Assembly: GCA_964304625.1 (NCBI GenBank)
Contig: OZ199841.1
Location: 1-18,219 of the forward strand
From: Kudoa neothunni
Taxonomy: Eukaryota > Animalia > Cnidaria
Direction of reading: 5' to 3'
Length of the DNA stretch: 18,219 nucleotides
The notes under the pieces are model-generated. The model saw only the letters and a program-made list of their open reading frames with translations, was not told the origin of the DNA and ran no database searches. Both the position numbers and the translations under genes were made by a program. Of this stretch, positions 1-18,219 are shown piece by piece (position 1 is the first letter of the stretch; each line of letters begins with the position of its first letter).

Positions 1-1250
1 GGCATAACAAAAGTCATTGGCCTATTCTATGGCATCCTTTCGTATCGCCACAGGAACCATAAGCCTCAAAGTCTTAAAGCTCGTGGTTAGAAGATAGAAT
101 CCGAACTGTCTTACAACGTTCTAAACTCAGATCATGACCTCGTTTAAGCGTCGAACAGACGTTCCAATACGTGGTTCTAACCACGATGGATGAGGAGTCC
201 AACATCGAAGTAGCAGAGGCTTTAGCCTCTTGCCCTATTGCCCCTTAGTTCCTTTTGTAACAAACTCCAATAAAGGATCCAGATCAACATAAAGGAGTTT
301 TTCTTCACATCATAGTGAAGCCTCACCCCAGGAAAAACGTTGATCTAGGAGTGATTCTGACTTCCAGAGTGTCGTTCAAGGAATAAGGGACTACTCCTCC
401 CTCAACCTATCCAGGATGTGTTCATCCTGGCCATTGTTTCACGAGGCCTTTTCAGTAAAGGACTGGCATCGTCAATACTTCCCTGGTTGCCAATGAAACA
501 ACAAGAAACTAAGGTACATTGGCACAGTCAAGATACTGCTGCCAGTAGAGGACTTTGGCAGTACTGGGCACTAAGCCTTTCTAACACCTATGTTTTTAGA
601 AAACAGGCGTGCCAGTTGTTGCCAAGTTCACTAAAAAGGACGTCGTACCAGGCAGACTTCATTGACACCTACAGCTGTCATCGATCAAAACAGGAAGCTA
701 AAGGAGCCTAAGAAGATCGTTACTCCACCCAACCTTTTCCTCTCCAAGGAAATGGAGGGTTCTGTTAAGAAAAAGGAACTCTTATTAGGCAAAAAGATCC
801 AGGACTGGGACGATGCCTTAGCTGTCTTTGTGCCCAGGACAGGATCTATTGCTATCACCAGGTTAGCCCTATGGCTCCGCCTAGTTCACCTTTTCCCTTA
901 CGGAACCGGTGCAGAAGAACAAGTCCATCTTCACTCCAGATCCATTAGGACTCATGGTGCAAAAGAGGAATGTTTTTCCTGTTCACAGAAAACCTGGTCT
1001 AGTTGCTTAGGATTTTCTAGAAAGCTTAATTGTCAGATGACAAGGAACGTCAAGCTAAAGAGGCATCTTCCTCATAAGCTTTATTCGCAACGTCCAGGAA
1101 AGAACTCCAGGAAACCTATAAGGATCGGAGTGTCTTGGTCTTGTTGGGACCTCATTCCCTAGGGAAAGATTTGCCCTAGGCTAAACGTCTTAACCCAGCG
1201 TCATAAAAACTACAGCAGGAATGACGATTACGCTAGGAACAGAAAAGGAG
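1..1250 (-). rRNA. rnl: Mitochondrial large-subunit rRNA, highly divergent; ends approximate
   Basis: Minus strand has domain V motifs TACTTCGATGTTGG (199-212) and GTCTGTTCGACGCTTAAA...ATGATCTGAGTTTAGAACGTTGTAAGACAGTTCGG (~101-161), a P-loop CTGGGGTGAG (~322-331), a 16Sar-type site CGCCTGTTTTCTAAAAACAT (590-609) and CCGTAAGGGAAA (~892-903). Confidence 0.93.
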
Positions 1251-1259
1251 TGGCCCATC

Positions 1260-1800
1260 TAGGCCAAAAGGAGATGGTTCCCCATTTCCTACCATGTTTC
1301 GACTTACTAGGGCTTTCACCCCAGGTGACGAGCAATGAGTCCCTTAGGAGGTCTGTTCACCTTGGTCCCATTAAAACCGAGATTACTCTCCAGTTCTAGA
1401 GCATAAAGGTTACACCCTATGCTCCAGCCCATGGTGAAATCTTCCCACATGCCATGTCACCAAGCTTCCTCAAGAAACTTGAGAAAGAAGTGGGCCATGC
1501 AACCTGTGTTAAAAAGAAGTAAGATTTAACGGTTTATCGGGACACCAGGGAACTGGACCAGCCACAATGTCCGAAGTCTAGGAAGTTTATTCTTCACAAG
1601 AGGCCCATCTTTTGTTCCCGGTACACCATAGACTACTTGATTTCCCTGGAAGAACCAAGGGAAAAAGTATCCTTTATCCACCTCCTAAAGCAAGAGAGTT
1701 TCATTTGTGTTACCGCTTAAGCTGGCACAACATTGAAACAACGTATACTTTAATGGCGCTTTCCATATCAAAACCTATGGTGTGTGGGCTAAAATAGTCC
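1260..1800 (-). rRNA. rns: Mitochondrial small-subunit rRNA, short and divergent; ends approximate
   Basis: Minus strand has a 530-loop variant GTGCCAGCTTAAGCGGTAA (~1710-1728), an h44 5' strand variant GGACTCATTGCTCGTCACC (~1324-1342), and AAGTCGAAACATGGTAGG followed by an h45-like hairpin (~1268-1305). Confidence 0.88.
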
Positions 1801-1809
1801 CAACACACT

Positions 1810-1877
1810 CCATTAAAGTTCCTCACAACCTCACCACATCAGAGGTTTTATGAGGAAATCACCATTAAAGTTCCTCA
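1810..1877. repeat. 16-bp direct repeat CCATTAAAGTTCCTCA (1810-1825, 1862-1877) around an imperfect hairpin (1819-1857) at the ORF141/rns junction
   Basis: Both copies are read directly; TTCCTCACAACCTC can pair with GAGGTTTTATGAGGAA. Confidence 0.8.
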
Positions 1878-2273
1878 GGACTTTCTCCACAAAGGAGTTT
1901 TACATTTGCTTGCCAATAAGCTTATGGGGAAAATAAGGCACAAAGTTGCCAATATACCCCATGAGCTATTGGAAACCATAGAAAGGAAAATCCCATCTTG
2001 GTTTGTTAAAGATGCTGGGCAATAAGGAAGACCAGTTAGAGCAGAAGACAAAGCAACCTGGAAAGAAGACAAACTGCTTACAGCAGATGTCAGAAGCTTA
2101 TGGCCACAAGAAGCCACAAGCCAGGAAAAGGACAAAGACTCTAACAGGACTATAAGAGCCCAGCTGGAGTCCAGGAATAAAAGAATGGACGGAATGATTC
2201 ATCAAACTAAGGATGAGGATTGAAGGAAAACAAATAAGACCCATGGAAACAATCCTCATAGGATTGTTTTCAT
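1848..2273 (-). CDS. Unassigned hydrophobic ORF, 141 aa (code 4)
   Basis: ATG at 2273 to TAA at 1848, reading through in-frame TGA. Protein MKTILWGLFPWVLFVFLQSSSLVWWIIPSILLFL...WRKSWGTLMVISS. Same strand and composition as the neighbouring genes. Confidence 0.6.
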
Positions 2274-2314
2274 GGGTCTTTTTTGTTTAAAATGGACAAG
2301 CTATAGGAAAACTC

Positions 2315-2626
2315 CTATAGTGGGGTTTTCATGGTAAAAGTCAGCAGAAAACAAGAAAAACTGACTAAAATACCATGAAACATGGAGGAGGATAAGGAAC
2401 TGCTTTCCAAAAGAAGAAGGAGGAAATCACTACGCAAGAGGGCACCATAGAACAGAGCCATATGGCAAGATAGTCCATGATTTCCTCTACTTCCTAAGGA
2501 AGATCCTTCTACCAATGCTGGAATTACCCATCCAGAAGTTGATCACATTCTCCAGTAAATCCTATGATTTATTCCTCAGAATAAGAAAGTTATGAGGAAA
2601 GATCATAGGATCCAGGCAATCAACAC
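2315..2626 (-). CDS. 103-aa membrane protein, possible divergent NADH dehydrogenase subunit 3
   Basis: GTG start overlaps the cox1 TAG (TAGTG). It has an N-terminal TM helix, a loop VEGSSLGSRG resembling the ND3 YECGFDPLGSAR loop, then a helix with an Asp (ALLRSDFLLLL) and a third hydrophobic segment. Confidence 0.55.
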
Positions 2627-4002
2627 TACAGGAAAACTAAGTAAGTGATGATTGCTATGGTAGCAATAATACAGCCTAAGTAGCCTGGAATAAGGAAACC
2701 ATTAGACTCATAAAGCATACTAGGAACTCGTCTAGGGATTCCTAGGAGACCTGCTCCATACAAAGGCAGAAATAGAGCCATGGTTCCCACAGTAAAAAGA
2801 AGAAGGGAACCATTATGGCTCACCATTCCTAGCCAATGTACTCCACAAGCAAAGGCTAAAAAGGCTGATATAGCCATTACCTGGTGGAAGTGAGCAACCA
2901 CAAAGTAGGTATCGTGTAACAGAATATCTGCTGTAGATGAGGAAAGCATAATTCCTGTTAAACCTCCTCCTACAAATGTGGAAAGGAAACACAGCAGAGG
3001 TAAAAGGATAGGACGAGTCTCTAGGCTACCAGATCTTACGCTAACAAGTCAACTGTAGACTTTTATGCCAGTAGGAACTGCAATAGCCATAGTTCCTGAG
3101 GAAAAGAGCAGTTTCACTTCTAGCTCTAAGTCCACAGTAAACATGTGGTGCGCATAGACTAAGTAGCCTAAGACTCCTAGACAAGATACCGAGGAAATCA
3201 GTCCTTCCTTACCATATAGGCCCGAACTGGCCTCCAGTGAAGCAGACAACACTCCAAAGGAAGGCAGAATCACCACGTAGACCTCAGGATGTCCAAAGAA
3301 TCAGAAAAGTAACTGGTACAATATAGGATCTCCTCCTCCTGAGGGATCAAACCAGGAACTACTGGTTGTTCTATCTAGCAAAATACCTAATAAGCCTAAG
3401 GCTAAAGCAGGAATTGTGCCAATGAACAACACAGCAGCAACGAATTGAGATCATACAAAAAGACTCAATTCTTTACGAGAGAAAGGAAGGAGAAGGAGGC
3501 GGAAAGAGACTACAGCATTACTGCTGCCTGCTCCACTGGCAATGCCTAGAGCATGAATTCCAGCAATAATCACATCAATAGATGTTCCATGCTGAAGTGA
3601 AGCTAAAGGAGGATACATGGTTCATCCTGGACTCCATCCTCCAGGCAACCAGAAGATCACCAGCATTGCTGTAGCTCATTCCACACCCAAGAGGCCCCCT
3701 ATATTAACCCGAGGTCAAATAAAATCCCATGTTCCAGTTTGGCCAGGAAATCATCAGTTAAGGAAACCTTGGCCAATTGGAACAAGAACCAGGAATACAA
3801 ACACCAGGCCATGAGCTGTTAAAAGAGAACAGTAAATTTCCTCAGTAGTTTGTCCATGAGGAAAGCTTATTTCTGCTCTAATGAAACAGGAACATGATGA
3901 AGCCAAAATAGAGGCTAAAAAGGATATTCTCCAATATCCTATAGCCACTATTTTAGCTGAAAGAGAACTGGAAAAGGAAGCAGAAAGCAAGCTAAAGGAC
4001 AC
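2626..4002 (-). CDS. cox1: Cytochrome c oxidase subunit I, 458 aa
   Basis: Track ORFs 3754-4002, 3049-3276 and 2626-2949 join in one frame via TGA=Trp. Motifs: TAHG, [58 protein letters not shown]. GTG start, TAG stop. Confidence 0.98.
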
Positions 4003-4204
4003 AAACTAGCCATAGGCTAGTTAACATCATCAGAGACAGAGGAAAAGGATCTGATAAGATTCCTCATGCCAAATAGGATAAAAAGGTTCCAGCAACCATT
4101 ACTTTTGCCAAAGGAACAAGAATCCTTATTAAAGATAAGGTTCTTGCCCAATAAAGCAAAAGTAAAAGGAGCAGAACCAAAGGAAAAAGAAGGCATGATA
4201 ACAA
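3992..4204 (-). CDS. Unassigned 70-aa very hydrophobic ORF (nad4L-sized, about three TM segments)
   Basis: TTG start 2 nt after the previous stop. Protein MLSCLLFPLVLLLLLLLYWARTLSLIRILVPLAKVMVAGTFLSYLAWGILSDPFPLSLMMLTSLWLVCVL. Its TAG overlaps the cox1 5' end. Confidence 0.5.
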
Positions 4205-4206
4205 GC

Positions 4207-4563
4207 CTAGGCTAGGATGAATTTCCCTGTTCTTAACAGGAAAACAGCCAGGCCAACAAAAGTTTGTATTAAAAGGACAATAAGGGATTTGATTTTAAGG
4301 AAACTTTTCTGGTCCTCAGGACATCCCGTGGTCTCCGTGGGATGCAGCCGGAATCGTAGTGTTGACACTATGGGAACTGGACATAGTGCCACTCCGACGT
4401 AAGGACTTAGGAGGCTTGAAAAGAATGATGCGAGGCAAAAGGCTAGGATTATTTTACCATCCACCCATTCCTCACAACAGAAGAAAATCAGACTGAAGCA
4501 AACAATTGCTCAAGCTCAAGAGAGCAAATGTCCCTCAGTCTTAAAGGAAAAGATTGTGATCAA
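4207..4563 (-). CDS. Unassigned ~118-aa membrane ORF downstream of cox2 (weak atp6 resemblance)
   Basis: Track ORF 4207-4464 extends upstream through two TGA codons to TTG 4563, in the cox2 frame. The C-terminal part contains PIVSTLRF and IVLLIQTFV. Start uncertain. Confidence 0.55.
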
Positions 4564-4578
4564 TGGGGGATCGTAAGA

Positions 4579-5199
4579 CTAAATGATTACAACATTTATG
4601 GCCATTAAGGCATGATAAGCCCCACATATCTCATAGCAGGCCCCAGTAAAAGATCCAGACACACAAGGCAAAAGAGTGTCTAACGTGATGTGTCCAGGAA
4701 TGACGTCCATTTTAACACCAAGATCTGGTAAAGATCAGGAATGAATGACGTCTAAAGAGTCTCCCATCACCAGAACTGGTCTGTGGGCAGAAAGGAAACA
4801 AGGGCTACAGGATTGTTGCAAAAACTGCCCATCACTCTGCTGACGAGACAAAAGGATTTCTTCCCAAACTAAAGAGGATTTGGAATATTGCCAAAACCAC
4901 TGTTGTCCACGGATATGTCAAACCTCAGTTGAGCCTTCATGACAGAAAAAGTGAAAGAAAGGTTCAACTCCAGGAATGACATATGCCAGGACCACTGAGG
5001 TAATTGGACAAATTACCAGGGAATCAAGTTTGGCTAAGAAAGGGCTATGCATGCCAATGGCCAATATGTTGTTCCTCATAAAAGCCATTGCCAGCATAAT
5101 GCTGGAAAGCCAAAGGACAAGGAGTGCCACCGCATAAAGGGAGGAATGAAGCACATTCCAGAACAGAAGAGGAAGCAATCCATGTTTATAGAAAAACAA
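4579..5199 (-). CDS. cox2: Cytochrome c oxidase subunit II, 206 aa
   Basis: Track ORF 4918-5199 continues through TGA to GQQWFWQY, DVIHSW, GVKMDVIPG and the CuA motif CYEICGAYHALM. TAG stop at 4579. Confidence 0.96.
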
Positions 5200-6202
5200 G
5201 GCTAAGAAGAACTGCTAAAGAGAACCAGGACTGTCCATAATCTTCCCAAAGGAAAGATTTGTTCACAGAGGGAATATATTTGTAACCGATTTTTACAAAT
5301 ATAAACAAGTAGGCTAAAAAAGCCCACAAAAGGAAAGTTGAAGCAATTATGCTGTCTTCCAAGGAAGTTTTCACTTTTCACACAAAGGAAAAAGGAAATC
5401 CTCCAAGGAGTCCAGCTATAAGACTTCAACTTAGGCTTTTTTGCCCTTGTGAACAAGCAAAAAGGAAAGATTTGGACAGACCATGGAAAATGCCATAGAG
5501 AAGAGAAAACCTAGGATCTCATGGCAAGAGGACATGGCAGATGTTCACAGAGAATGCAGTGCTTCAAGCCAGTATCCTTTTCCCATGAGACTCACGAAGA
5601 AGAAAATAAAGATGTCAAAGTGAGGAAGGAAGGAAAAGGATAATTGTTCCCTCCACAAATCTTAGCCAGAAAACTCCTTCTAACAATAGAGCTGTGGTCA
5701 AATAAAGACCACTAGCTACTATGGTGAGGGAGTGGACTAGGCTAGACATGGTGGCCACACCCTTCATAGCAGAAAGAAGCCATGATGAAAAAGGAAACAT
5801 TAGACTTTTTACAGAAAGGCTCAGGAAACAAATAAGGGAGTGGACCGGGGACATTGTTTTCCTAGGGAACACTAGGGATAATTTCCATTCCTGGTCAGCA
5901 TCTGCACTAATGCAAAATAAAGCACTAAAGCAGAAGAAAGTGGAAAGAGTGCTATGGACAATCATACTGGCTAAAGCGTTCCCAGTAGGCACTGTAGGCC
6001 TTCTGCCCACTATGGCCTGTGAGGAAAATCCCATCATGGATCATGATAGGCACAATCAGACAAAGTGGTCAGCTGAATAGAACAAGACAGCTGAACCACT
6101 AAGCAAGATGTACCATCATACCACTAGGGAAATTTTCCTCACCAGGACACAAAGGGTGGAAATAGCCCACAGTGCCAAAAGGAAACACAAAAGGGAAAGC
6201 AA
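5186..6202 (-). CDS. nad5: NADH dehydrogenase subunit 5, truncated (~338 aa)
   Basis: Single code-4 frame with ND5 signatures KSLMFPFSSWLLSAMKGVATMSSLVHSLTIVASGLYL (cf. KSAQFPFHSWLPxAMEGPTPVSALLHSSTMV), KRILAWST and HGLSKSFLF. TTG start inferred, TAA stop. Confidence 0.88.
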
Positions 6203-6212
6203 TTGTTCACTT

Positions 6213-6911
6213 TTAGCCTGGTATTCTTGCCAGGAGCATTAGTGCTGAAAGCACCAGGCAAATGGAAATTGCACCAGGAAGTGTAATGAGGAAAACATGG
6301 CACTGCACTAGGGCTTTAGCCCACCATAAGAAAAACCAAGGATGCCCTAAGGATCCTATGGAAAAAGTCTCTATTGGGACAAGAAAGTATGTGCTAATGT
6401 GGAGGCACATTAACCATCATGGAGAAAATCCTGATGCTCCCAGGACAAACAGAAAAGAATCTTGGACTCATCACACCATAAGCCAACTTCCACTCTGGAC
6501 ATGATTTTCACAAGAATCCCTATGTTGAGTGAGGAACAAAAGAACCAATAATGGAAAAGTTCCTCAAGCAAATAGGGAAAGGAGTGAAAAAGAGACATGA
6601 AAGAAGTGGCTTAGGATGTACTGGTCCAGGATAAGAACAAAGGACTTTACCAGGGAAGAGTAGAGAACATAATTCCTCACTCTTCTTCCTGGAAAAGTTG
6701 TCCTGGACAAAAGGAAGGCTAAAAGGAATGATGGACTCGTGCCAAGAAGAAGCACAAGATACAATGCATAAAGGCTATAAAGGCTGCTAACAATGTAAAG
6801 AAGCATTAGGGTTTCCTTAAGCAACAATAGGAAGAAAACCCAGGATTGCTGATCTTTTCTAGATCAGCTTAAACCGGATAATGCTGACCAATAGGACACT
6901 GTGTCAGCCAT
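6213..6911 (-). CDS. 232-aa polytopic membrane ORF, possible nad2/nad4-type complex I subunit
   Basis: Track ORFs 6564-6827 and 6213-6410 join via TGA. ATG 6911 overlaps the nad1 stop (TAATG); the frame is also open up to TTG 6998. Weak motifs: SSLVKS, LMCLH, GSLGHPWFFLWWAK. Confidence 0.65.
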
Positions 6912-7825
6912 TAATAGCCAAGATGCATTGCATCAGGAGCTCCCTGAAAGCAATAAGAAAATCAAGCCTGGAAGACTTCAAGCCAACAAAGGAAACAATC
7001 TTCCCTAGCCAAATTAAAAGATACCAAAAGGGATCAAGAAAATATGGCCCAGGGAAGTTGCCACCAGAGCATGTTGGCTAAAGCCTGGAAAGAGTATCGT
7101 GGCAAAAGTCCCCTTAGGATAAAGAGGGTTATAGTGTGGCTTATAATAGCTCACTTCATTAAGAGACAAAAGGAAATAAAGTGAATCAATCATCGGTATT
7201 CCAGCACAGCAAACCATAGGAAGCTGAAACCTCCATAGATCACTCCAAACCCTCCTCCTAGATCTGATTCTGATTCAGGAATGTCTCAAGGGTGTCTTTC
7301 ACCAATGCACATCATGAGGAAAGACATCCCAAGACCAGGAAAGGCTATCCAGGACAAAAGTACTAAGGAGTCTTTCTCCATCATAAAAAGGCCATCAAGA
7401 ATTATGATGAAAGCAAGACAGAAAAGTACAAAGGAAAAGATGCCTTCCCCAAGGAACATCAGAATCCGGATCCTAGATCGTCCTAATGGACTGTAGCCAC
7501 GGAACCGGCTAGAGGAAAGGAGCATTAGGGAGCCACTTGTACCCAATAGAGCTAAGATAGCCAATCCAGGATCTAGGCAGTAAGGGAGAAAAGACAAAGG
7601 AATGGTTTCCAAACCAAGTGCTAAAAAAGCCATAATCAAAGAACTATAAGAGATTCATGGGTTTTTAGCACAAAGTTTAAAACCATCACTGGCTAATGTC
7701 AAAAATCCATAGCCAATGAGAGGTCCTGTTCTACCCATAACTAAGCCTAGAAACCGTCTGTCCACAAAGGATCCTAGGCCGGAACAAAGTGCTAAAAGAG
7801 CTAGAACCAAGGAAAAGGAAATCAA
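6911..7825 (-). CDS. nad1: NADH dehydrogenase subunit 1, 304 aa
   Basis: Motifs DRRFLGLVMGRTGP...ASDGFKL, YSPLGRSR, ERHPWDIPESESDLGGGFGVIYGG...LEY and LRGLLPRY match ND1 conserved blocks. TTG 7825 to TAA 6911. Confidence 0.93.
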
Positions 7826-8833
7826 TTGTTTTCCTGTGGTTCAAGCTCCTGGTGATCATGAAACCTAGGTTTCATGAGCGGATTAGCACTTTGTATCCAG
7901 GTAGTTTCTGGAGTGGGCTTAGCCCTAGGGTACCAGGACGGGAGTGCTCATTTCCACATCGAAGATGCGGAAAGGCACGGAGGATTTTGATCATGAAGAA
8001 GGGCTCACAGCACAGGAGCTACAATATACTTCTTAGCCATAATAAACCATATGGCGAGAAGCATATTTAGCTCAAGCTTAGCAAGCTCAACTTCATGATC
8101 CGGGAGCGTGCTCTATTTCCTTAGTCTAGCAATAGCCCTATTTGGCTATTCGCTGACTGAAGGAAATATGGCACGCTGAGGAATGACGGTAGTAACTTCT
8201 GTAGTCTTGAGTCTTCCAGCTGGAGAATCTATTTTGCCTGTTATCGTAGGAGACTATGGAATCTCCAGTTTAATCCTTCCTAGAGTCTATGCACTCCACT
8301 TCCTATTGGGGCTAATTAGCCCAATAGTAGTGGTGTGACACTCTCTAGAAGTCCACCATAACGAATCTAGTACAGAATTGGGCACTAGAATAGGCCCATC
8401 TGGAAAAGATTTCGCTAGTGGGGGAGGGATGAAGGATCTACTGGTAACAGCCTTCACCACAATTCTTCTGCTAAAAGGCTTTGACGATTCGTCTATTCTG
8501 TGAGGCCTAATTGAAGACATGAATGCCAATGACTGGCCTCAACAGAACAAGACTCCAGAACCAATAGGCCCAGAATGGTACATTTTACCCTACTTCGCTG
8601 GTCTAAAACTCACTAACATTTATGCCATTCTGGCATCGTTAGTGGCCATCATAGGGGCCTATTTGTTACGAGGAGGGCCTTGAAGCATCTTAGGCATCAT
8701 ACTAGGCTGAAGCTGTTTTATCTTAGGCAAATTAGCATTAACAGCTCATGAAAGCTTAGAGGAAGTTTATCTGATCGCTTTCATTCTCCTCTGGACAAGT
8801 TGGACATGCTGATCTTACCGAAGAGAAAGCTAG
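7826..8833 (+). CDS. cob: Cytochrome b, 335 aa
   Basis: Code-4 frame with WNLGFMSG, RAHSTGA...NHMARS, GYSL...WGMTV, ALHFLL...WHSLEVH and TPEPIGPEWY. All four heme His are present. TTG start, TAG stop. Absent from the ORF track because of TGA codons. Confidence 0.96.
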
Positions 8834-8865: not shown

Positions 8866-9053
8866 GTTGGAATAAAACCATCCTAAAGGATGGTTTTATA
8901 AAGGAAATTCCTCCTTTAAATCTTTACCTTTTATGAGGAAAGTTTTAAAGGAGCGGAGTAAAACCTCCCCTATGGGGAGGTTTTACAATGGATTTTTTTC
9001 CTGGAATAAAACATTCCTGAGGAAGGTTTTATAGGGGAGCCTCTTATTCCAAC
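8866..9053. repeat. Cluster of four related hairpins directly after cob, enclosed by a 10-bp inverted repeat
   Basis: ATAAAACCATCC-TAAA-GGATGGTTTTAT (8872-8899), CTCCTTTAAA...TTTAAAGGAG (~8911-8953), GTAAAACCTCCCC-TAT-GGGGAGGTTTTAC (8958-8986), ATAAAACATTCC-TGA-GGAAGGTTTTAT (9006-9032). Outer arms GTTGGAATAA / TTATTCCAAC. Confidence 0.85.
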
Positions 9054-9815
9054 TGCGCCCCATCCACCCCAAGGATTTATTTTAATAAAACTTTGTCTTT
9101 ATCTTCGTCCGCCTTGTCTCACTGGGGCAAAGGATCCTAGCAGGAGCCCCAACCACCCGCAGGTCTCTTTATTCCGTCCAGGAGTAAGAAAACCCGGGTC
9201 GGAGGGTCTTGAAGGATCCAAAAAGGTCCTTATTTGGTCAACATATGGGGTTTTTCCACCCATGTCAGAAAATGGAGTAAGAATAAGCACTTTACAGCCT
9301 AAAGTCTTATTCTTACTATGGGGGAGACACACCCATAAGTTGACCGTCATAAGGTCAATTCCCACCGTTCCGGCTTAGACGGGGCAAAGACGTCTCGGCA
9401 GAGACACTGCCCCGCCTCTGCCTAAAATACATTTTAATATTTCATAAATAATGCATTTTAGGCTCGAGGTAGGGGTACCTGTAAAGAATGTGTCTTACAG
9501 TCTTTACCTTGGCTAAACGGAGTTCCACTGTTACGACACAGGAACAGGTCCCTAGGCTTACAGTCCTCATTTGTCCCACATGGAATGGAGCCAGGAACCT
9601 TCGGTGTCGGATGGCAGGTAGGGTAGACCAGTCAGGCTACATCTCCTCCATCGCCTATGCCATGCGCGGAAAACTTAGTTCCGCTCTGAAAGGAGGTCAT
9701 GCCGATCCAAACTTATCCGATTCCTTTATGAACGACTGTGATTTGTGCAGACATGAGGAGGAGGAATGCAATAACGTGTCCGACATGATCAAACAAATTC
9801 CCATTCTGTGAACTT

Positions 9816-11675
9816 GCTGTCCGGTCGGACAACGGATTTTTCCCTTAAAAATAGGACAGGATTTACGATGGTTTCTAGGACACTCAGAAAACCATCTACA
9901 AGTCGATCAAAAGTCACTTTTAGATGGAGTTTCTGGCTATAACCTCAGAAAAAGGAGTTTAAAATGTAAACATTTTGAAAACTCACTTTCTGAGGTTTAG
10001 CGAAACCTCGGAAAATAACCAAGGATTTCCGTCATAGGAAAAAGTGATCGACTGCGTTGAGATCGAGGAAATACTCGGATCTCATAGGTGTACACCTTAG
10101 GAGTTTCGAGTTTCCATCGACGTTGTCGGCATACGACCAGTACAAAGAGAACGACCTAGGCTGATGGCCTTATGGCCTATCAGATGAGGCGTAGCCGATA
10201 GGGACGCAGCCTAATGGCAAGCTGGCAAGAGGCGCCACCAGAGCGGCTGAAGGGCCTCTGTCAATGTCGAGACAGGTTCGACGCTGACATCATGGTGACA
10301 GCTGTTGGTGAGCGAATAGTTGAACCAAGAGCTCCGACCCTAAGAGTCTCTATGGATGAAAATCCGTCAGAAAGGACTGTTATATGGACCTCGGATTGGG
10401 ATTCCAAATAGGGACGAGTAGGGATATTGGAAGGGGGTTCATCCCTAGGAGACCTTGTAACGGGCAGCCCTCCTGAATGGTCTATTCCTGAATAGGAACG
10501 ACAGCCCGAAACGAAGTTAGGGTATGATCTGGTTCACAAGGAGGTTACACGCCGACTGTTTCCGGGCTCGGCCCTCGGAGAGAGCGACCAGGGGGGGTTC
10601 CAATAAGGAAACTTCATTAAGCTTTCTCGTTCGGTAGGGAACTTGGAGTCTCCGGACGGTGAGCGAAGTTGGAGGTCACCTTGTTTTGACTAGAGGATAG
10701 GAACGAAGTTCGCCTGAAGTAGAATGTCCATTCTCCCCATGTGAGGTGACTCCGTGTGGCACGAGTGTTGCCGAAGTGCACCGTTGTCCTTTTACCGGGA
10801 CGGAAAGGCAGGCCATCAAGTCTGTTTGTGACGATGGACTGGCTCACAGCTTACGGGACTCCTAAACGATCAGAGATCGCCAGATCCGGAACATGTGACG
10901 TCCTCAATTAATACTCAACTCCCCCACATTACGACGATAGGATGTGAGGTAGTTTTGTTCCAATCCTAGTATTAATTGGGGGTCCGACTATTGTGCCTTA
11001 AGCGAGAGAGATTGTTCAACAATTACTTGGAGGATGAGACGGCGTATAGTCTCCCCGGGTGAAGAAAGGACGTCCCACTCTATGAGTCACCACAGTTTGG
11101 AAAGGCCGACCCGGCCGGTTTACAAAGTGCGGGCCTGCTGTTTATTGCAGCACGTTCATAGGGTAGTCGTGGCTAACCCTAGAGGGTCCGTTGGAGACCC
11201 TACTTTTAAAGGCCAAAGGGTGCGATCGTCACCGAGGATTCAACATTCTAGCGAGTCCTCCATGCCTAAAGTTCATGTCCTGTGGACCTTCCTTTAGGCA
11301 AACTTTTGCCAGACTGCCAGAGGCAAGCGTCCCAGATCCTATAGGGCACGTCACCTTCCTTAGGCCGTGTTATAAGGCCGGCAGGGAGGCAGTGACCTTC
11401 CAAGGCACCTGCTAGTACGGAACCAGGTTGAGTCAGGGGAAAGGCGCTAAGGAAACGCAGTAGGCGTGGATTTGGAATATGACCATGTACCATGGACTGT
11501 TGCAGCCAAATCCCGAGCTCATCGCGATGCAAGAAGCTCTGGTAATGTATCTGAATCGCGTATCGTGACTGGAGACTTAGGAGAGGATCGGGTGTGGCAG
11601 CGGTATTCCCTGCTCCGACCCATGCGAAAACAGTATGGCCTAACAACCGGTGAGGGTTGGGGAGGTTTTTCAGGA
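9816..11675. repeat. Left copy of a long diverged inverted repeat (partner 14529-16382)
   Basis: Collinear reverse-complement blocks include 9818-9831/16367-16380, ~10017-10190/~15975-16153, 10427-10668/15506-15748, 10927-10956/15235-15264, 11513-11564/14643-14694 and 11659-11675/14529-14545. Confidence 0.92.
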
Positions 11676-12232
11676 AACCCGATAGCCATGATGGAAGCCC
11701 ATACGTGTTAGGAGCGCGTTTTCTAGCGACTCACTTGTGTGCCCCGTACATGCTGGTGCCCAATGTCGGCCCACCGCCGAGGAGGTGCAGGACAAGGGGA
11801 CCTGCACCATGCCCAACTCCGCCTGGGCTGGTGTGGGACGAAATAGGACTGTGCGCATGCAGTACGCCACGAACAGGCGTTAGGATTCCTCCTCACTTGG
11901 GATCCTATCCCAGTTCGTCAAGCGGACGAAGAGCAGACAAACTTTCATTAAAATCCCCGTAGATATAAAATATCTAGGCGCATTTTATGTAATGTTTGTC
12001 GGGGAAGTTCGACAGGAGTTAACCACACGACCATCCTGGTCTGGGCATGGCAAGAGTCAGGCCCCACCGTAGGTACAGCCGGACTCGCAGTCTAAGCCAA
12101 CGTCTTAGACAGAGTCTAATCCTTTTGACCTAGAGTCTGCTTATCCTGGCTTAGATGCAGGACAATAAAGTCCTGTCCCTCTCCAGGGGGGACAGACTCT
12201 CCATCCAGGGCCCCCTTCGTCATGAGGATTTC

Positions 12233-12300
12233 AGCCAATAATTGGAGGAAAAATCCAGCGTAAGTCGCAGATTTCTTCGCTACGATTAAACTGGCTTTCC
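12233..12300. repeat. Inner inverted repeat, left arm (partner 14254-14320)
   Basis: AGCCAATAATTGGAGGAAAAATCCAGCGTAAGTCGCAGATTTCTTCGCTACGATTAAACTGGCTTTCC is the near-exact reverse complement of 14254-14320. Confidence 0.92.
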
Positions 12301-12405
12301 TCATCGAAAGAAGGGAGTCCTGTCCTGGAGCGCCGCAAGCAAGCGACCAAATCTCCAGACTCCTTGGACAAGAGTTTGGAGTAAGAGCCTCCGCTAGACA
12401 AAGCA

Positions 12406-12719
12406 AAGTCTAGCCTGGGGAAAGGTCAACAATCTAAGCACGACCTTTCCTCCCCCGGTGGAGTTGGAATCCACCTCCTGCTAAACTAGGCAGGACTTGT
12501 GAAGGGAGGCCGTCTACCAAAATAACCTTGGCCAATGAGACTGGATGCAATCCATCCGGAGATGACTCAGATGGTCAAGGCAGGGATGTCTACGTCCTGC
12601 TGGACACAATTAGCTAAGTCCAGCTTGGGGGAAGATCAATCATTTAAGCTAGATCTTCTCTCCCCCGGTGGAGTGGAAATCCACCTCTTTGCTGGCTAAG
12701 CAAGGATTTGTGTAGGGAG
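12406..12719 (+). ncRNA. Duplicated ~103-nt structured element (12406-12508, 12616-12719); candidate structured RNA or ssDNA motif
   Basis: The copies share CTCCCCCGGTGGAGT..AATCCACCTC and differ by paired changes (AGGTC/GACCT vs AGATC/GATCT; GCCT/AGGC vs GCTT/AAGC). G-U wobbles favour the plus strand. Confidence 0.6.
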
Positions 12720-12840
12720 ACAGACAGAACATGCCTGGAACATGGAGTCAAGATTCGTCCATCTTGCCTGGGGCTCCACGCCCTTACAGGGGTGGAAGAG
12801 CCGAGCCCATACCGGGCGAAGGGAGGTTGAGCTTTTCTCA

Positions 12841-13961
12841 ACCAGTGAAGGAAAAAAATAATATTTATTTTTCTTCTGAAAGGAAAAGAAAAAAATGATA
12901 TTTTATTTCTTCACGGAAGGGGAGAAAAAGAGACCCCATAAGGAAAAAAAAGTATAGTTTTTCTTATAGAAAAACAATACTATTTTCCTTATGGGCGATC
13001 GCATTTCTCCCCTAAGGGAAGGAAAAAATTTCATATTTTTCTTTGGCAAGGGTGGAGAAAAGTCAGACCAAGTTGGAGAGAAAGAAGGGAATTTTTCAAC
13101 CCAAGGAGGAATAAATTCTTCCTCTTCTCTTCCAACAAGGTCTGCTTTTTTCCCCCGCTAAGGAGAAAAAAATATATATATTTTTCTTCACAGGGGGAGA
13201 AAAACTAGACCAAGTAAAGAAAAAGTAGATCTTTTTCCCTATAAGGGAAAAGATCTAATTTTACTTTGTTTTATATTATGTAAATAATAGGGCTAAGAAT
13301 TTACATAAATATGTAAAGTAAAATAAATGATTCTTTTTCAAACTAAAATGGAGAAAAATTAATCATTTCTTTATATACTTGGTCTAGTTTTCTTCCCCCG
13401 AGGAAGAATAAAAAAATATTATTTATTTTTCTTTACTGGGGAAAAACTAAACCCTTTTCGGAAGAAAGAAAAAGGAAAGATTTTTTAATAAAACTTTCTC
13501 TTTTCTCTTACCGGAAAGGGTCTTAGTTTTCTCCCAAGAAGAAGAAAAAATATTATTATTTTTCTTCACGGGAGAGAAAAGTCTACAGACCAGAGAAGAA
13601 AAGAAAAAAGTAAATCTTTTTCCCTACAAGGGAAAAGATTTAATTTTACTTTGTTTTATATTATGTAAATAATAGGGCTAAGAATTTACATAAATATGTA
13701 AAGTAAAATAAATGATTCTTTTTCAAACTAAAATGGAGAAAAATTAATCATTTCTTTCCATTCTTCTATGGTCTGTAGACTTTTTCTCCCCAAGGAAGAA
13801 GAAAAAAAAATATATTTTTTTTCCATTCACTGGGGGAAAAAACTCTAGACCAGAGAAGGAAAGAAAAATTATCATTTTTTCTTTTCTCTTCTCATGGTCT
13901 AGAGCTTTTCTTCCCCCCAGGAAAGGAAAAAATATTATTATTTTTCTTTCCTTCTCTGGTC
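12841..13961. repeat. AT-rich array of six variable stem-loop modules alternating with a conserved ~30-nt hairpin repeat
   Basis: Repeat consensus GAAGAAAAAAATATTATTATTTTTCTTC. Modules bounded by GGGGAGAAAA...TTTTCTCCCC at 12919-13012, 13050-13156, 13193-13399, 13438-13535, 13570-13791 and 13832-13918. Confidence 0.9.
13221..13757. repeat. 152-bp near-identical direct repeat (13221-13372, 13606-13757) inside modules 3 and 5
   Basis: Direct comparison shows three differences, all in the first hairpin. Confidence 0.93.
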
Positions 13962-14253
13962 GAAAGTCTCGACCTACTTCGTCAAGAGACTCAGCTTCAC
14001 CTCCCCTTATCGGGTCGTATGCCGGGGCTGTAACTTCTTCTCCAGTACAAGATAAGGTCCCATAATTAACCCCTCCAAGGGAGAAGTATAAAAAGTAACT
14101 CTCCCAGATCATTCTTTTTATCTTCTGCCCTGGAAGGGCAGAATTAATGGACCCTTTCTTCTCCATGGAAGAAGGGCGCATAGCCCCTTTCCCCCTAGTC
14201 GAAAAGTATTTCTCCTGGGCCTTTTAACCTGGAGCTTAAGTTACCTATGACAA

Positions 14254-14320
14254 GGAGAGCCAGTTAAATCGTAGAAAGAAATCTGCGACTAACACTGGAT
14301 TTTTCCTCCAATTATTGGCT
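14254..14320. repeat. Inner inverted repeat, right arm (partner 12233-12300)
   Basis: Reverse complement of 12233-12300 with a few substitutions and one 1-nt indel. Confidence 0.92.
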
Positions 14321-14354
14321 TTTCTCCTTTGATAGGAAACTTTTCACAAAGGAT

Positions 14355-14387
14355 AAATAGCCCCACCTTCGGTGGGGTTATTTTTTT
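14355..14387 (+). terminator. Intrinsic-terminator-like hairpin with T tract
   Basis: AAATAGCCCCACC-TTC-GGTGGGGTTATTT running into TTTT. Function is inferred from shape only. Confidence 0.35.
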
Positions 14388-14528
14388 AGATGGCGGAACC
14401 TTGGTGCACGCACACTCCTCTAACAACAAGAGGTCATTACGTCTATGGCTCCTAGCTAGGCCTATCAACCTCCCCCTCTTCCAATCAGCCTCGAACCCTT
14501 CGTTTCCTCTAGCTTCAATACATCACGC

Positions 14529-16382
14529 TCCTGAAAAACCTCCCCGGGTTTCAGCCATCGACAGCCTATACTGCTTTCGTCACCGGGCATGGCGGGGCCT
14601 AACGCGTGCATCAACCGGGCCTCCATTCGTCCTACGCGTTGTGATACACGATTCAGATACATTATCAGAGCTTCTTGCATCGTGATGAGCTCGGAAAATA
14701 CCAGTAACGAGGCTACATGGCCATTTGCCATTGTGTATTTTCACGCCTACTGCACTGCACTCAAGGACGTCAGTGACTCAACATCCCTACGGTTCTGTCG
14801 CCATCCGGGAACTGGCCAAATCTCCTCACTACCGTTTCTAAAGAAAGCTCCATGATCCAATTAGGCCTACGTAATGGAGGGAACAGGAGATTCAGAAGTC
14901 AGTCTACTCAGGAAAAGATTGTTACACATTCGCACCGACACTTGACAAAGAGGATTGGACCCTAACGACCCTCTAGAGTTTTTCTATCTAAAACAGGTCC
15001 GGACCAAGGTTTTAGCTGGAGCTATCTACGGATACTCCACCAGCGTGACGCAATAAACAGCATCTCGTGTGAAAAACCGACCCAACAAGAGGTCTCTCAA
15101 GTTAGGCTCTTCCGGACGGAGAACGTCTCCTTACAAAAGGCTGAGTGGCGCCTCTCTGCGAAAAAGAGTTGAACTCTTATCTCGGTTTCCAGGTCAAGGC
15201 CACAACGGCATTTTCAAACTTTAAAATAAGGAGCAAAACTCCCTCACATCCTATCGTCGTAATGCCCGGACAAAGAAGCTTTCAAACACCTCATTCACCG
15301 GTCGCTTCTCTCCCTACGGACAACCTAACCCTCCGATATCCCCCTAAACTCTGGGGAGCTCATCACAAACAGATTCGGGGGGATTTTCTACGCTTTTGGG
15401 ATCCGTACAGGAACGCTTGAACAACGCTAACCGAAAGGAGTCCAATCTTGGGACATTGAGCCTGGCCACATAATCGCGTTATATTCAAAAGGGATCGCTC
15501 CTCAGCTTCGCTCACCTTCCGGAGAATCCAAGTTCCCTACCGAAAGTGAGAGCTTAATGAACCTTCCTCTTTGGAACCCCCCCTGGTCGCACTCTCCGAG
15601 GGCCGAGCCCGGAAACAGTCGGCGTGTAACCTCCTTGTGAACCGGATCATACCACTAACTTCGTTTCGGGCTAACGTTCCTATTCAGGAATAGATCTCTC
15701 AGGAGGGCTGCCCGTTACGCGGACTCCTAGGGATGAACCCCCTTCCAAACCCGCTCCTCGTTCTTTAGGCAGAAATCCCGATGTTCTCCTCAAACGATCA
15801 CATGACAGGGTTTTCTCCCTATCATCCTCCGAACGTCGGACGAAAGTGCTTTCTGACACTTTCCTAGCTCACCCTATGTCATCGCCGAACTTGTCTCGAC
15901 AGTCTTAACGCTCTTATGGGGCCGCTCAAGGACCCTCGAACGACTTCTTCTTCTACCTCCTATTCCAGTCGGCAAGCCTTATCTGATTAGGCCTTAAGGC
16001 CATCAGCCTAGCATAACGCTCATTTAGAGCTGGTCGTAAAACGACAACGTCGATGGAAACTCGTAACCCATAAGGTGTTCACCTATGATCTCCGAGGATT
16101 TCCTCGATCTCAACGCAGTCATTCGCTTTTCCTATGACGGAAAATCCTTGGTTGTTTTTGAATCCGTCAAGCCCTATTTTACAAACTGACATGAAAAAGT
16201 GTGTTTTTAGAGTTTTCATAAAAAAACTCATAAAAACCCCTCAATATGAGGAAAAGGACAGTTTTGTCAACAGGGACTTTATTAATTTTATAAAGAATTT
16301 AGAAAATTAACAAAAGTGTAGTTGACTACTCAAATAGTGTCCTACTTTTCTAAGCGTAAAGTTCGCTGTCCGACCGGACAAC
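14529..16382. repeat. Right copy of the long diverged inverted repeat (partner 9816-11675)
   Basis: Same blocks as the left copy, in reverse order and complemented. Confidence 0.92.
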
Positions 16383-16494
16383 CAGTGTTTTTAAGACTAC
16401 ATCTGGCTTAATAAAATAAGGAAAGCCATGAAGTCACGTTACCCACCCCACCACCCCTCATGCTATCGTACATTGTCACTTGTTCTTTTATTTG

Positions 16495-17331: not shown

Positions 17332-18156
17332 TTAAATTGAAGACATTAAGAAACAAAATGTTACTATTTTCACAATGAAATGAACAAAATCTTGATGAGA
17401 AAAGTAACATCCATTCTGATGTCACACTGGACGGACTTTAGCCAAGATTAAATAGGAGAAAAGGATTAATCAAGGCCAAAGACACAAGTGGCAAGTTTGT
17501 CCAACCACTATCAGCCAATAATACTCCTGGAGGACTAAAGGACTGAAACTCATACCAGTCAGCATCAACAACTGACAAGGTTGAATAATCGCCTTTTGTT
17601 CTAAAATAACAAAGGCTATTCAGGGCAAGAAAGTCCAGACCAGAAGCACTATAAAGGCTTCAGCACAGGTGGAAAACGCTTCTAGGGCTAAAGCTCCAGA
17701 AGCCATCACAAACACTAAGCTTACAGCTGTGTTGTGCTGAAAAAGAAGTCTGCCCATTAAAGCCCAGTAAGACCAAACTGGCTGATATGTACCAGATCAC
17801 CAGATCTGCTGAGACGAAGTAAGAATCAGCAAAGAAGCATCAAAGCTAAGTCAGAAAGAAAGCTTTGAGGATCCTATAGCTGCCTCACTCCATCTACAGC
17901 AGATCCAAGATAGTGCCTTATGTCAATAAAGAATCCAGGAAAGACTTAAGGCACTATTGGAAATCATGGACAAAAGCAGCCATGGCCCATAAGACAAGAA
18001 AAGGGCCAGACTTCTTAAGGATCTGTACTTTAGCAGAAAAAGGAATAGGAGAACTTCTAGACAAAAGAGAAGGAGTCAAACGTCCCAAGAAAGGATAGCT
18101 AAAGCACAGATTGAAACCAAGCCCACCCTACTCCACCCTAATTGCTCTTCAGCCAA
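17332..18156 (-). CDS. 274-aa polytopic membrane ORF, possible nad4/nad2-type complex I subunit
   Basis: Only one minus frame is free of TAA/TAG over 825 nt; it has several TGA codons and is strongly hydrophobic. Weak antiporter-subunit motifs: WLLLFCLEV (TM Glu), YWHKALSWICCRW (Lys...Trp) and LMLTGMSFSPLVLQEY. TTG start inferred. Confidence 0.7.
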
Positions 18157-18219
18157 ATAAACTTATTTAGGAGTTTAAGACATGGACTTATGGAGCAGAA
18201 TTGAAATAGGAACTGCTGA

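What the first reader, a model, noticed from the sequence alone, without database searches (positions are those of the whole stretch)
12841..13961. Repeat-module array: conserved hairpin repeats alternating with six different self-complementary modules
Seen: the unit is a short hairpin GAAGAAAAAAATATTATTATTTTTCTTC, a linker usually ACN, then GGGGAGAAAA-Nx-GACC-[variable 60-170 nt insert]-GGTC-Nx-TTTTCTCCCC. Each module has a different stem but both arms change together: AGTCAGACC/GGTCTGCT, ACTAGACC/GGTCTAGT, ACTAAACCC/GGGTCTTAGT, AGTCTACAGACC/GGTCTGTAGACT, ACTCTAGACC/GGTCTAGAGC. The whole array can be closed by an outer helix, ACCAGTGAAGGAAA (12841) with TTTCCTTCTCTGGT (13947-13960). It lies near the symmetry axis of the large inverted repeats. 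Inference: structure is selected while sequence turns over. Candidates are a multi-hairpin replication origin, a protein-binding scaffold, or a polycistronic precursor cut at the repeats into small RNAs.
Basis: partly seen in the sequence, partly recalled or inferred. Interest (0 to 1): 0.85.

Follow-up and report, generated by a model that had tools for sequence, protein, structure and literature searches.

The report
Hairpin array in Kudoa mitochondrial control region
The A+T-rich centre of the large non-coding half of the mitochondrial genome of the fish parasite Kudoa neothunni is a real array of hairpin-forming repeats whose two arms change together. It is most likely a DNA-level control region (replication origin and/or transcription pivot), not a new kind of RNA gene, and its function is untested.

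Summary
The window is the complete 18,219-bp circular mitochondrial genome of the myxozoan Kudoa neothunni. The array lies in the gene-free half that the literature reports for Kudoa.

Eight short A-run/T-run elements alternate with six long hairpin modules at 12847-13955.
- The six modules fold far better than dinucleotide shuffles, and better than shuffles that keep the purine/pyrimidine tracts (0 of 300).
- Each module's 5' arm fits its own 3' arm best, out of all 720 possible pairings.
- Two near-identical 153-nt cores differ by three substitutions, and two of these form a compensatory pair (P about 0.004).

- The short "hairpins" are no better than tract-preserving controls.
- Both strands fold equally, and G:T and A:C mismatches are balanced. 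There is no RNA-strand signature.
- No Rfam family matches, and long hairpins occur throughout this genome.

Best reading (0.45): the A+T-rich, strand-symmetric core of the control region, at the axis of a 6.5-kb diverged palindrome, built by tandem duplication and arm-to-arm correction. Non-functional palindrome turnover is a strong rival (0.3).

No related sequence or RNA reads could be reached. The scan's earlier notes cover this same window only. Interest is modest.

The parts
12841..13961 (.). Whole array: 8 short A-run/T-run elements alternating with 6 long hairpin modules; G+C about 30% against about 45-53% in the flanks
12847..12912 (.). S1 (12847-12876) and S2 (12883-12912): two short purine-run / A+T loop / pyrimidine-run elements with no module between them
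   Evidence: not better than tract-preserving shuffles
12919..13013 (.). M1: 95-nt near-perfect hairpin; lacks the GACC/GGTC box
   Evidence: z -11.2; ensemble P 0.96
13018..13044 (.). S3 short element
13051..13156 (.). M2: 106-nt hairpin. Its apex (13103.5) coincides with the axis of the outer inverted-repeat arms
13163..13189 (.). S4 short element
13194..13399 (.). M3: 206-nt module, a basal stem closing three inner hairpins (three-way junction)
13220..13372 (.). Core copy 1 (inside M3): 153 nt that differ from copy 2 by 3 substitutions
   Evidence: (D3)
13403..13434 (.). S5 short element
13438..13535 (.). M4: 98-nt hairpin
13541..13568 (.). S6 short element; 23 nt identical to S8
   Evidence: (D5)
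13571..13792 (.). M5: 222-nt module with a basal stem like that of M6 and a core like that of M3
13605..13757 (.). Core copy 2 (inside M5). The G-C pair 13228/13255 of copy 1 is A-T here (13613/13640)
13796..13829 (.). S7 short element
13832..13917 (.). M6: 86-nt near-perfect hairpin with a 7-nt loop
   Evidence: z -8.5
13920..13955 (.). S8 short element; its 3' half pairs with the 5' half of S1 (the 'outer helix')
12825..12843 (.). Left flanking hairpin, the inverted counterpart of 13958-13974
13958..13974 (.). Right flanking hairpin
9812..12301 (.). Left arm of the diverged, collinear inverted repeat that encloses the array
14253..16386 (.). Right arm of the inverted repeat

Best explanation
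The array is the A+T-rich core of the mitochondrial control region of Kudoa neothunni. It works as DNA, not as an RNA gene.

Structure. It is a run of alternately oriented polypurine boxes (GGGGAGAAAA-like, and GAAGAAAAA-like in the short elements). Either strand, once unwound or displaced, therefore folds into the same string of hairpins. In supercoiled duplex DNA the near-perfect modules can extrude as cruciforms.

Inferred function. This strand-symmetric hairpin field sits at the axis of the 6.5-kb palindrome. I infer that it is where replication is primed (hairpin priming on a displaced strand, as at vertebrate OriL) and/or where the two long transcription units start or end.

Shown: the anatomy, the fold significance, the arm co-variation, the strand symmetry and the genomic context.

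Inferred: that the array grew by tandem duplication of blocks (385-nt period), that its hairpins are kept paired by arm-to-arm templated correction and/or by selection, and every statement about origin or promoter activity.
For: Identity and context:
- The window is the whole 18,219-bp mitochondrial contig.
- All genes lie in about 17335-18219 plus 1-8830.
- The other half is reported as gene-free in Kudoa (PMC4492933).

The array itself:
- It is the G+C minimum, 0.30 against 0.45-0.53.
- It lies at the centre of a collinear inverted repeat.
- It holds 14 of the genome's 23 local inverted repeats in 6% of its length.
- Modules fold significantly with DNA parameters as well as RNA parameters.

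Strand symmetry:
- The + and - strands fold alike, -462.9 and -447.3 kcal/mol.
- G:T and A:C mismatches number 6 and 5.
- The R-box has 16 hits against 3.8 expected; 11 are in the array, in strict +/- alternation.

Pairing is kept.

Growth by duplication.

Literature: A+T-rich, repeat-rich and palindrome-rich control regions are usual in invertebrate mtDNA (PMC1762429; PMC11034133).
Against: - No origin, promoter or protein-binding site has been mapped in any myxozoan.
- Conservation in K. hexapunctata could not be checked. Takeuchi et al. say the non-coding half is not conserved among the three more distant Kudoa species.
- The short elements are not significant on their own.
- Strong hairpins are common elsewhere in this genome, including inside cob. 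Hairpins alone therefore do not mark a control element.
- The skew change at the array follows from the inverted repeat itself, so it is not independent evidence.
Confidence: 0.45

Rival explanations
1. Non-functional by-product. The centre of a long palindrome and its low-complexity purine/pyrimidine tracts are prone to slippage, tandem duplication and snap-back (quasi-palindrome) templated synthesis. These processes generate hairpins and keep perfecting them. The array is tolerated junk in a genome half that carries no genes.
For: - Symmetric insertions in both arms are what templated arm-to-arm copying produces.
- Mismatches show no wobble bias: 6 G:T, 5 A:C, 13 other.
- The short elements are explained by tract composition alone.
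- The same words recur in shifted registers between modules.
- Hairpins are frequent across the whole genome.
- The non-coding half is reported as not conserved among Kudoa species.
- Myxozoan non-coding regions are generally filled with repeats.
Against: - Divergence after duplication is very uneven: the core has 3 changes in 153 nt, and S6 and S8 are identical over 23 nt, while M4 and M6 are only about 65% alike. This needs constraint or local conversion.
- The genome must hold an origin and promoters somewhere in this half, and the array is its most distinctive site.
Confidence: 0.3
2. Relic of chromosome ends. The inverted repeat and its central array descend from the fused terminal inverted repeats of a linear, medusozoan-type mitochondrial chromosome. 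The array would be what remains of the telomeric repeats. This is an account of origin and is compatible with either reading of present function.
For: - A collinear inverted repeat of about 2.5 kb per arm meets head to head at the array.
- All medusozoans studied carry inverted repeats as mitochondrial telomeres, and Myxozoa plus Polypodium are allied to them (PMC9380995).
Against: - Kudoa mtDNA is circular by PCR, long reads and Southern blot.
- Polypodium has no inverted repeats.
- The authors infer a circular myxozoan ancestor.
- Pfam found no domain at all in the 10 open frames tested, which lie in the arms, the spacer beside cob and the presumed rRNA stretch.
- Inverted duplications also arise de novo.
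Confidence: 0.1
3. Polycistronic precursor. The array is transcribed and cut at the short repeats into module-sized structured RNAs with a function of their own.
For: - Each module is a stable, self-contained fold.
- The genome has no tRNA genes to act as punctuation, so hairpins could serve as processing signals.
- Other hairpins sit at gene ends, at 2228-2288 and 8872-8986.
Against: - No strand preference in fold energy or in wobble pairs.
- No Rfam match above noise, and equal scores on both strands.
- The loops are not conserved between modules.
- The putative cut-site hairpins are not significant.
- Module sequences differ, so they cannot share one target or partner.
- The mitochondrial-mode tRNA calls in the array are low-grade.
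Confidence: 0.08
4. Assembly artefact: a fold-back or chimeric long-read error created the palindromic array.
For: Palindromes can be produced by long-read library artefacts, and the reads could not be inspected here.
Against: - The arms are imperfect, with bulges, mismatches and asymmetric loops. An artefact would give exact fold-backs.
- The contig is circular and of similar length to the independently assembled, PCR-checked K. hexapunctata genome, at 92.2% identity.
Confidence: 0.02

Closest known systems
A+T-rich control regions of invertebrate mtDNA with tandem repeats and long palindromes (insects, nematodes, flatworms; PMC1762429, PMC12052430)
   Same: It is the largest non-coding region, has a local A+T excess, contains tandemly duplicated units that each form stem-loops, and varies in length through duplication.
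   Different: The units here are not copies of one repeat. Six modules have different stems, nested inner hairpins and strictly alternating polypurine boxes, and the array sits at the axis of a 6.5-kb diverged palindrome. Cnidarian control regions were reported as nearly devoid of palindromes.
Repetitive hairpin-forming elements of sponge mtDNA and double-hairpin elements of fungal mtDNA (PMC2800124)
   Same: These are families of hairpin-forming inverted repeats in long intergenic regions. Some are A+T-rich, some form double or triple hairpins, and their stems are maintained.
   Different: Those elements are dispersed through the genome, with conserved stems and variable loops. Here all copies lie in one locus and the stems differ between copies.
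Yeast mitochondrial ori/rep elements and the vertebrate OriL stem-loop (from my own knowledge, not tested here)
   Same: A G-rich or G+C-rich hairpin set in A+T-rich DNA near a transcription start; priming on a hairpin formed by a displaced single strand.
   Different: There is no sequence similarity and no mapped primer or promoter. There are many hairpins rather than one, and they are the same on both strands.
Terminal inverted repeats of linear medusozoan mtDNA (PMC3268669, PMC9380995)
   Same: Long inverted repeats in a cnidarian mitochondrial genome.
   Different: The molecule here is circular, the repeats are internal, head to head and 8-30% diverged, and no telomere-associated genes are present.

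Membership tests
Animal mitochondrial control region (A+T-rich region) | Lies in the main non-coding region of the mitochondrial genome | tested here: met
   Code-4 reading frames fill about 17335-18219 plus 1-8830; the rest is reported as gene-free in Kudoa.
Animal mitochondrial control region (A+T-rich region) | Local A+T excess, with repeats and stem-loops | tested here: met
   G+C is 0.30 in 13001-14000 against 0.45-0.53 around it. Repeats and hairpins.
Animal mitochondrial control region (A+T-rich region) | Contains the mapped replication origin and/or transcription promoters | not testable with these tools
Animal mitochondrial control region (A+T-rich region) | Conserved blocks between close species | not tested
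   The K. hexapunctata sequence could not be reached.
Repetitive hairpin-forming elements (RHE / double-hairpin elements) | Copies dispersed through intergenic regions, and sometimes genes, of the mitochondrial genome | tested here: not met
   The array matches only itself in the whole 40-Mb assembly. R-box hits outside the array are few and isolated. Hairpins elsewhere have unrelated sequences.
Repetitive hairpin-forming elements (RHE / double-hairpin elements) | Stems conserved between copies, loops variable | tested here: not met
   5' arms of different modules are less alike than the two arms of one module.
Repetitive hairpin-forming elements (RHE / double-hairpin elements) | Each element folds into a stable hairpin | tested here: met
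Known structured RNA families, including tRNA and miRNA-like precursors | A match to a curated covariance model at its gathering score, or a sound cloverleaf | tested here: not met
   No Rfam hit at gathering score. At relaxed threshold only generic hairpin models appear, at a third of their cut-offs and equally on both strands. ARAGORN in standard mode finds none, and its mitochondrial mode gives only low-grade calls.
Strand-specific functional RNA structure | Excess of G:U over A:C mismatches on the transcribed strand, and a better fold on that strand | tested here: not met
   6 G:T against 5 A:C; -462.9 against -447.3 kcal/mol.
Medusozoan-type mitochondrial telomere | Inverted repeats at the ends of a linear chromosome | tested here: not met
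   The contig is circular and Kudoa mtDNA is circular by PCR, long reads and Southern blot. The repeats are internal.

The most novel reading that the evidence does not exclude
The modules are transcribed and released as a set of stable hairpin RNAs, cut at the short repeats, in a mitochondrion that has lost all tRNA genes. That would be a new class of mitochondrially encoded small structured RNAs whose fold, but not sequence, is under selection.
Probability: 0.07. Interest if true: 0.75.

Novelty: new variant of a known kind. Interest (0 to 1): 0.35.

Why it matters
Half of every Kudoa mitochondrial genome has been described only as carrying almost no genes. Where replication and transcription start in any myxozoan mitochondrion is unknown, and in cnidarians generally I know of few mapped sites.

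This analysis gives that half an anatomy: a 6.5-kb diverged palindrome with an A+T-rich, strand-symmetric hairpin field at its axis. That names one concrete 1.1-kb target for origin and promoter mapping.

It also offers a clean natural case for separating selection on structure from templated arm-to-arm correction. Recent duplicates here show a compensatory pair among only three changes.

If the array is only palindrome turnover, it is an ordinary feature of a repeat-rich organelle genome.

Tried and rejected
Searches that failed:
- Exact look-ups of two reading frames beside the array: nothing on record.
- Homologue searches with a nad1 piece and with the 145-aa frame over the right end of the array: no hits.
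- One 20-nt word of the core against metagenome contigs: no match.

Searches that found relatives but not the non-coding half:
- A cox1 piece found Kudoa-like cox1 proteins.
- Their contigs stop at the edges of the coding half or are about 2 kb long, so no related non-coding half was obtained.

Negative annotation results:
- Rfam at the gathering and relaxed thresholds gave nothing usable.
- Pfam on ten open frames of the non-coding half and its neighbours gave nothing.
- Bacterial promoter and terminator scans are not applicable to a phage-type mitochondrial polymerase. They only re-found the inner hairpins.

Rejected readings:
- tRNA-like genes. The mitochondrial-mode calls in the array are weak, and the two 'anticodons' differ only through the loop substitution between the duplicated cores.
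- G-quadruplex: the G-runs lie more than 100 nt apart.
- GC-skew switch as evidence for an origin: it follows from the inverted repeat.

Full report
**What the window is.** The window is the whole of contig 4 of a 40.26-Mb, four-contig assembly.
- With the bacterial code it has no reading frame above 166 aa and no tRNA or Rfam hit.
- With TGA read as tryptophan it shows cox1, cox2, nad5, nad1, cob and further frames, all between about 17335 and 8830 across the start of the record.
- Length, assembly size and chromosome number match the published Kudoa neothunni assembly from yellowfin tuna: an 18,219-bp circular mitochondrial contig, 92.23% identical to K. hexapunctata (PMC12239612).
- Takeuchi et al. 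(PMC4492933) state that Kudoa genes are packed into one half. [quoted passage not shown]
- That paper never uses the words hairpin, palindrome or inverted repeat.

The finding lies in the middle of this non-coding half.

**The observation.** Reading searches gives eight short elements (S1-S8), each a purine run, an A+T loop and a pyrimidine run. Six long hairpin modules (M1-M6, 86-222 nt) stand between them, in the order S1 S2 M1 S3 M2 S4 M3 S5 M4 S6 M5 S7 M6 S8, at 12847-13955.
M1 lacks the box, M4 has an altered one, and M6 has a shorter insert.
- The five quoted stem pairs are correct.
- The outer helix pairs at 13 of 14 positions and appears in the minimum-energy fold. It is the innermost part of the large inverted repeat.

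**Is it more than chance?**
- The six modules fold with z from -5.5 to -10.4 against dinucleotide shuffles (-8.5 and -11.2 for M6 and M1).
I permuted purines among purine sites and pyrimidines among pyrimidine sites. None of 300 such shuffles folded as well for any module, with RNA or DNA parameters.
- The short elements fail this control (z 0 to -2.2). In the ensemble of the whole strand they do not fold on themselves, P about 0. Instead they pair with each other or extend the module stems.
- So the modules are real hairpins. The 'conserved short hairpin' is better described as a pair of opposed polypurine boxes.

**Do the arms change together?** I aligned every 5' arm with the reverse complement of every 3' arm. 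The assignment of each arm to its own partner is the single best of all 720. This holds when the shared G/A run is left out. Arms of one module are more alike than 5' arms of different modules.

A sharper case comes from a tandem duplication with a 385-nt period.
- The cores 13220-13372 and 13605-13757 differ by three substitutions.
- One is in a loop. The other two turn the G-C pair 13228/13255 into A-T.
- The chance of this for three random changes is about 0.004.

Divergence is very uneven across the period. The core is about 98% identical and S6 and S8 are identical over 23 nt, yet M4 and M6 and the basal stems are only about 65-80% alike with many indels. M5 has a basal stem like that of M6 but a core like that of M3. 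The core has therefore been either copied recently or constrained.

**DNA or RNA?** Four results argue against one functional RNA strand.
- The two strands fold almost equally (-462.9 and -447.3 kcal/mol).
- Mismatches in the stems are 6 G:T, 5 A:C and 13 other. There is no sign that wobble pairs are tolerated on one strand.
- Rfam gives only generic hairpin models at about a third of their cut-offs, equally on both strands.
- The decamer GGGGAGAAAA, with one mismatch allowed, occurs 16 times against 3.8 expected. Eleven hits are in the array, in strict alternation of strand.

The array reads the same on both strands. That is what one expects of a DNA element that acts on either strand, or of a palindrome-making process.

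**Context.**
- The array is the G+C minimum of the genome (0.30).
- It holds 14 of the 23 local inverted repeats.
- It is the centre of a collinear, patchily conserved inverted repeat, 9812-12301 against 16386-14253, at 53-100% per block.
- Flanking hairpins at 12825-12843 and 13958-13974 are counterparts of each other.
- All genes but cob are on the minus strand, and nad1 and cob abut head to head. The two long transcription units must therefore either diverge from or converge on the non-coding half. Either way the array is the pivot. This step is inference.

**A caution.** Strong local folding is not peculiar to the array. In 120-nt windows the rest of the genome has a mean z of -1.6. It contains long hairpins at 2228-2288, at 7989-8100 (inside conserved cob coding sequence) and in 9241-9360, with z about -8. 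Hairpin-making, or selection for hairpins, acts genome-wide here.

**Explanation.**
- I put the array down as the A+T-rich core of the control region, acting as DNA (0.45). It would be a strand-symmetric field of hairpins and cruciforms that primes replication and/or sets transcript ends. It was built by block duplication and kept paired by arm-to-arm templated correction or by selection.
- The main rival is that the same mutational processes made it and it does nothing (0.3).
- A relic of fused terminal repeats of a linear medusozoan-type chromosome is possible as an origin story (0.1).
- The small-RNA precursor reading has no support but is not excluded (0.08).
- An assembly artefact is unlikely because the arms are imperfect (0.02).

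**What could not be done.**
- The source paper says very few RNA reads of the host sample map to the parasite.
- No related non-coding half could be fetched.
- The scan's earlier notes on this window concern the inverted repeat, the symmetric architecture, a tandem pair at 12406-12719 and the nad1/cob junction. I checked those parts that touch the array.

**Verdict.** This is a real, statistically solid structural feature that the two genome papers I read do not describe. It is of a kind well known from organelle control regions and hairpin repeat families. It differs from them in its module diversity, its strand symmetry and its place at a palindrome axis. Its function is unproven.

Noticed in passing
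window 9812-12301 and 14253-16386: The non-coding half is a 6.5-kb collinear inverted repeat with very patchy conservation. Blocks reach 92% (10521-10671 / 15503-15653) beside stretches near 55%. Pfam finds nothing in its open frames.
   Followed up: partly
window 7989-8100: A 112-nt hairpin (-46.8 kcal/mol, z -8.0) lies inside the conserved N-terminal coding part of cob. Strong folds are common across the coding half (mean z -1.6 in 120-nt windows).
   Followed up: partly
window 2228-2288: A near-perfect 61-nt hairpin (29-nt arms, 93% complementary) sits at the junction of two minus-strand reading frames (1851-2300 and 2318-2701). It may be a transcript-processing signal in a genome without tRNA punctuation.
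   Followed up: no
window 8872-8986: Three hairpins lie directly after the cob stop: 8872-8899, 8911-8953 and 8958-8986, with perfect stems of 12-13 bp in two of them. They may mark the 3' end.
   Followed up: no
window 12435-12498 and 12650-12709: ARAGORN in mitochondrial mode calls tRNA-like folds with anticodons cca and tcc on the minus strand. Later work holds that myxozoans have no mitochondrial tRNA genes.
   Followed up: partly
L005:1-70: A 9.8-kb Logan contig of a different Kudoa-like species (cox1 about 52% identical over the 140-aa piece searched) covers exactly the coding half. It breaks about 75 nt past cob in a tandem repeat of about 33 nt, each unit an A-run / loop / T-run inverted repeat. 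Short A/T-run hairpin repeats may be common at the edge of Kudoa non-coding halves.
   Followed up: no
window 1-1850 (minus strand): The rRNA genes are not detected by Rfam at any threshold used. By synteny with the gene-free gap 6643-8905 of L005, they should lie here.
   Followed up: no
window 7805-7864: The nad1 and cob reading frames overlap head to head, which leaves no spacer for divergent promoters.
   Followed up: partly
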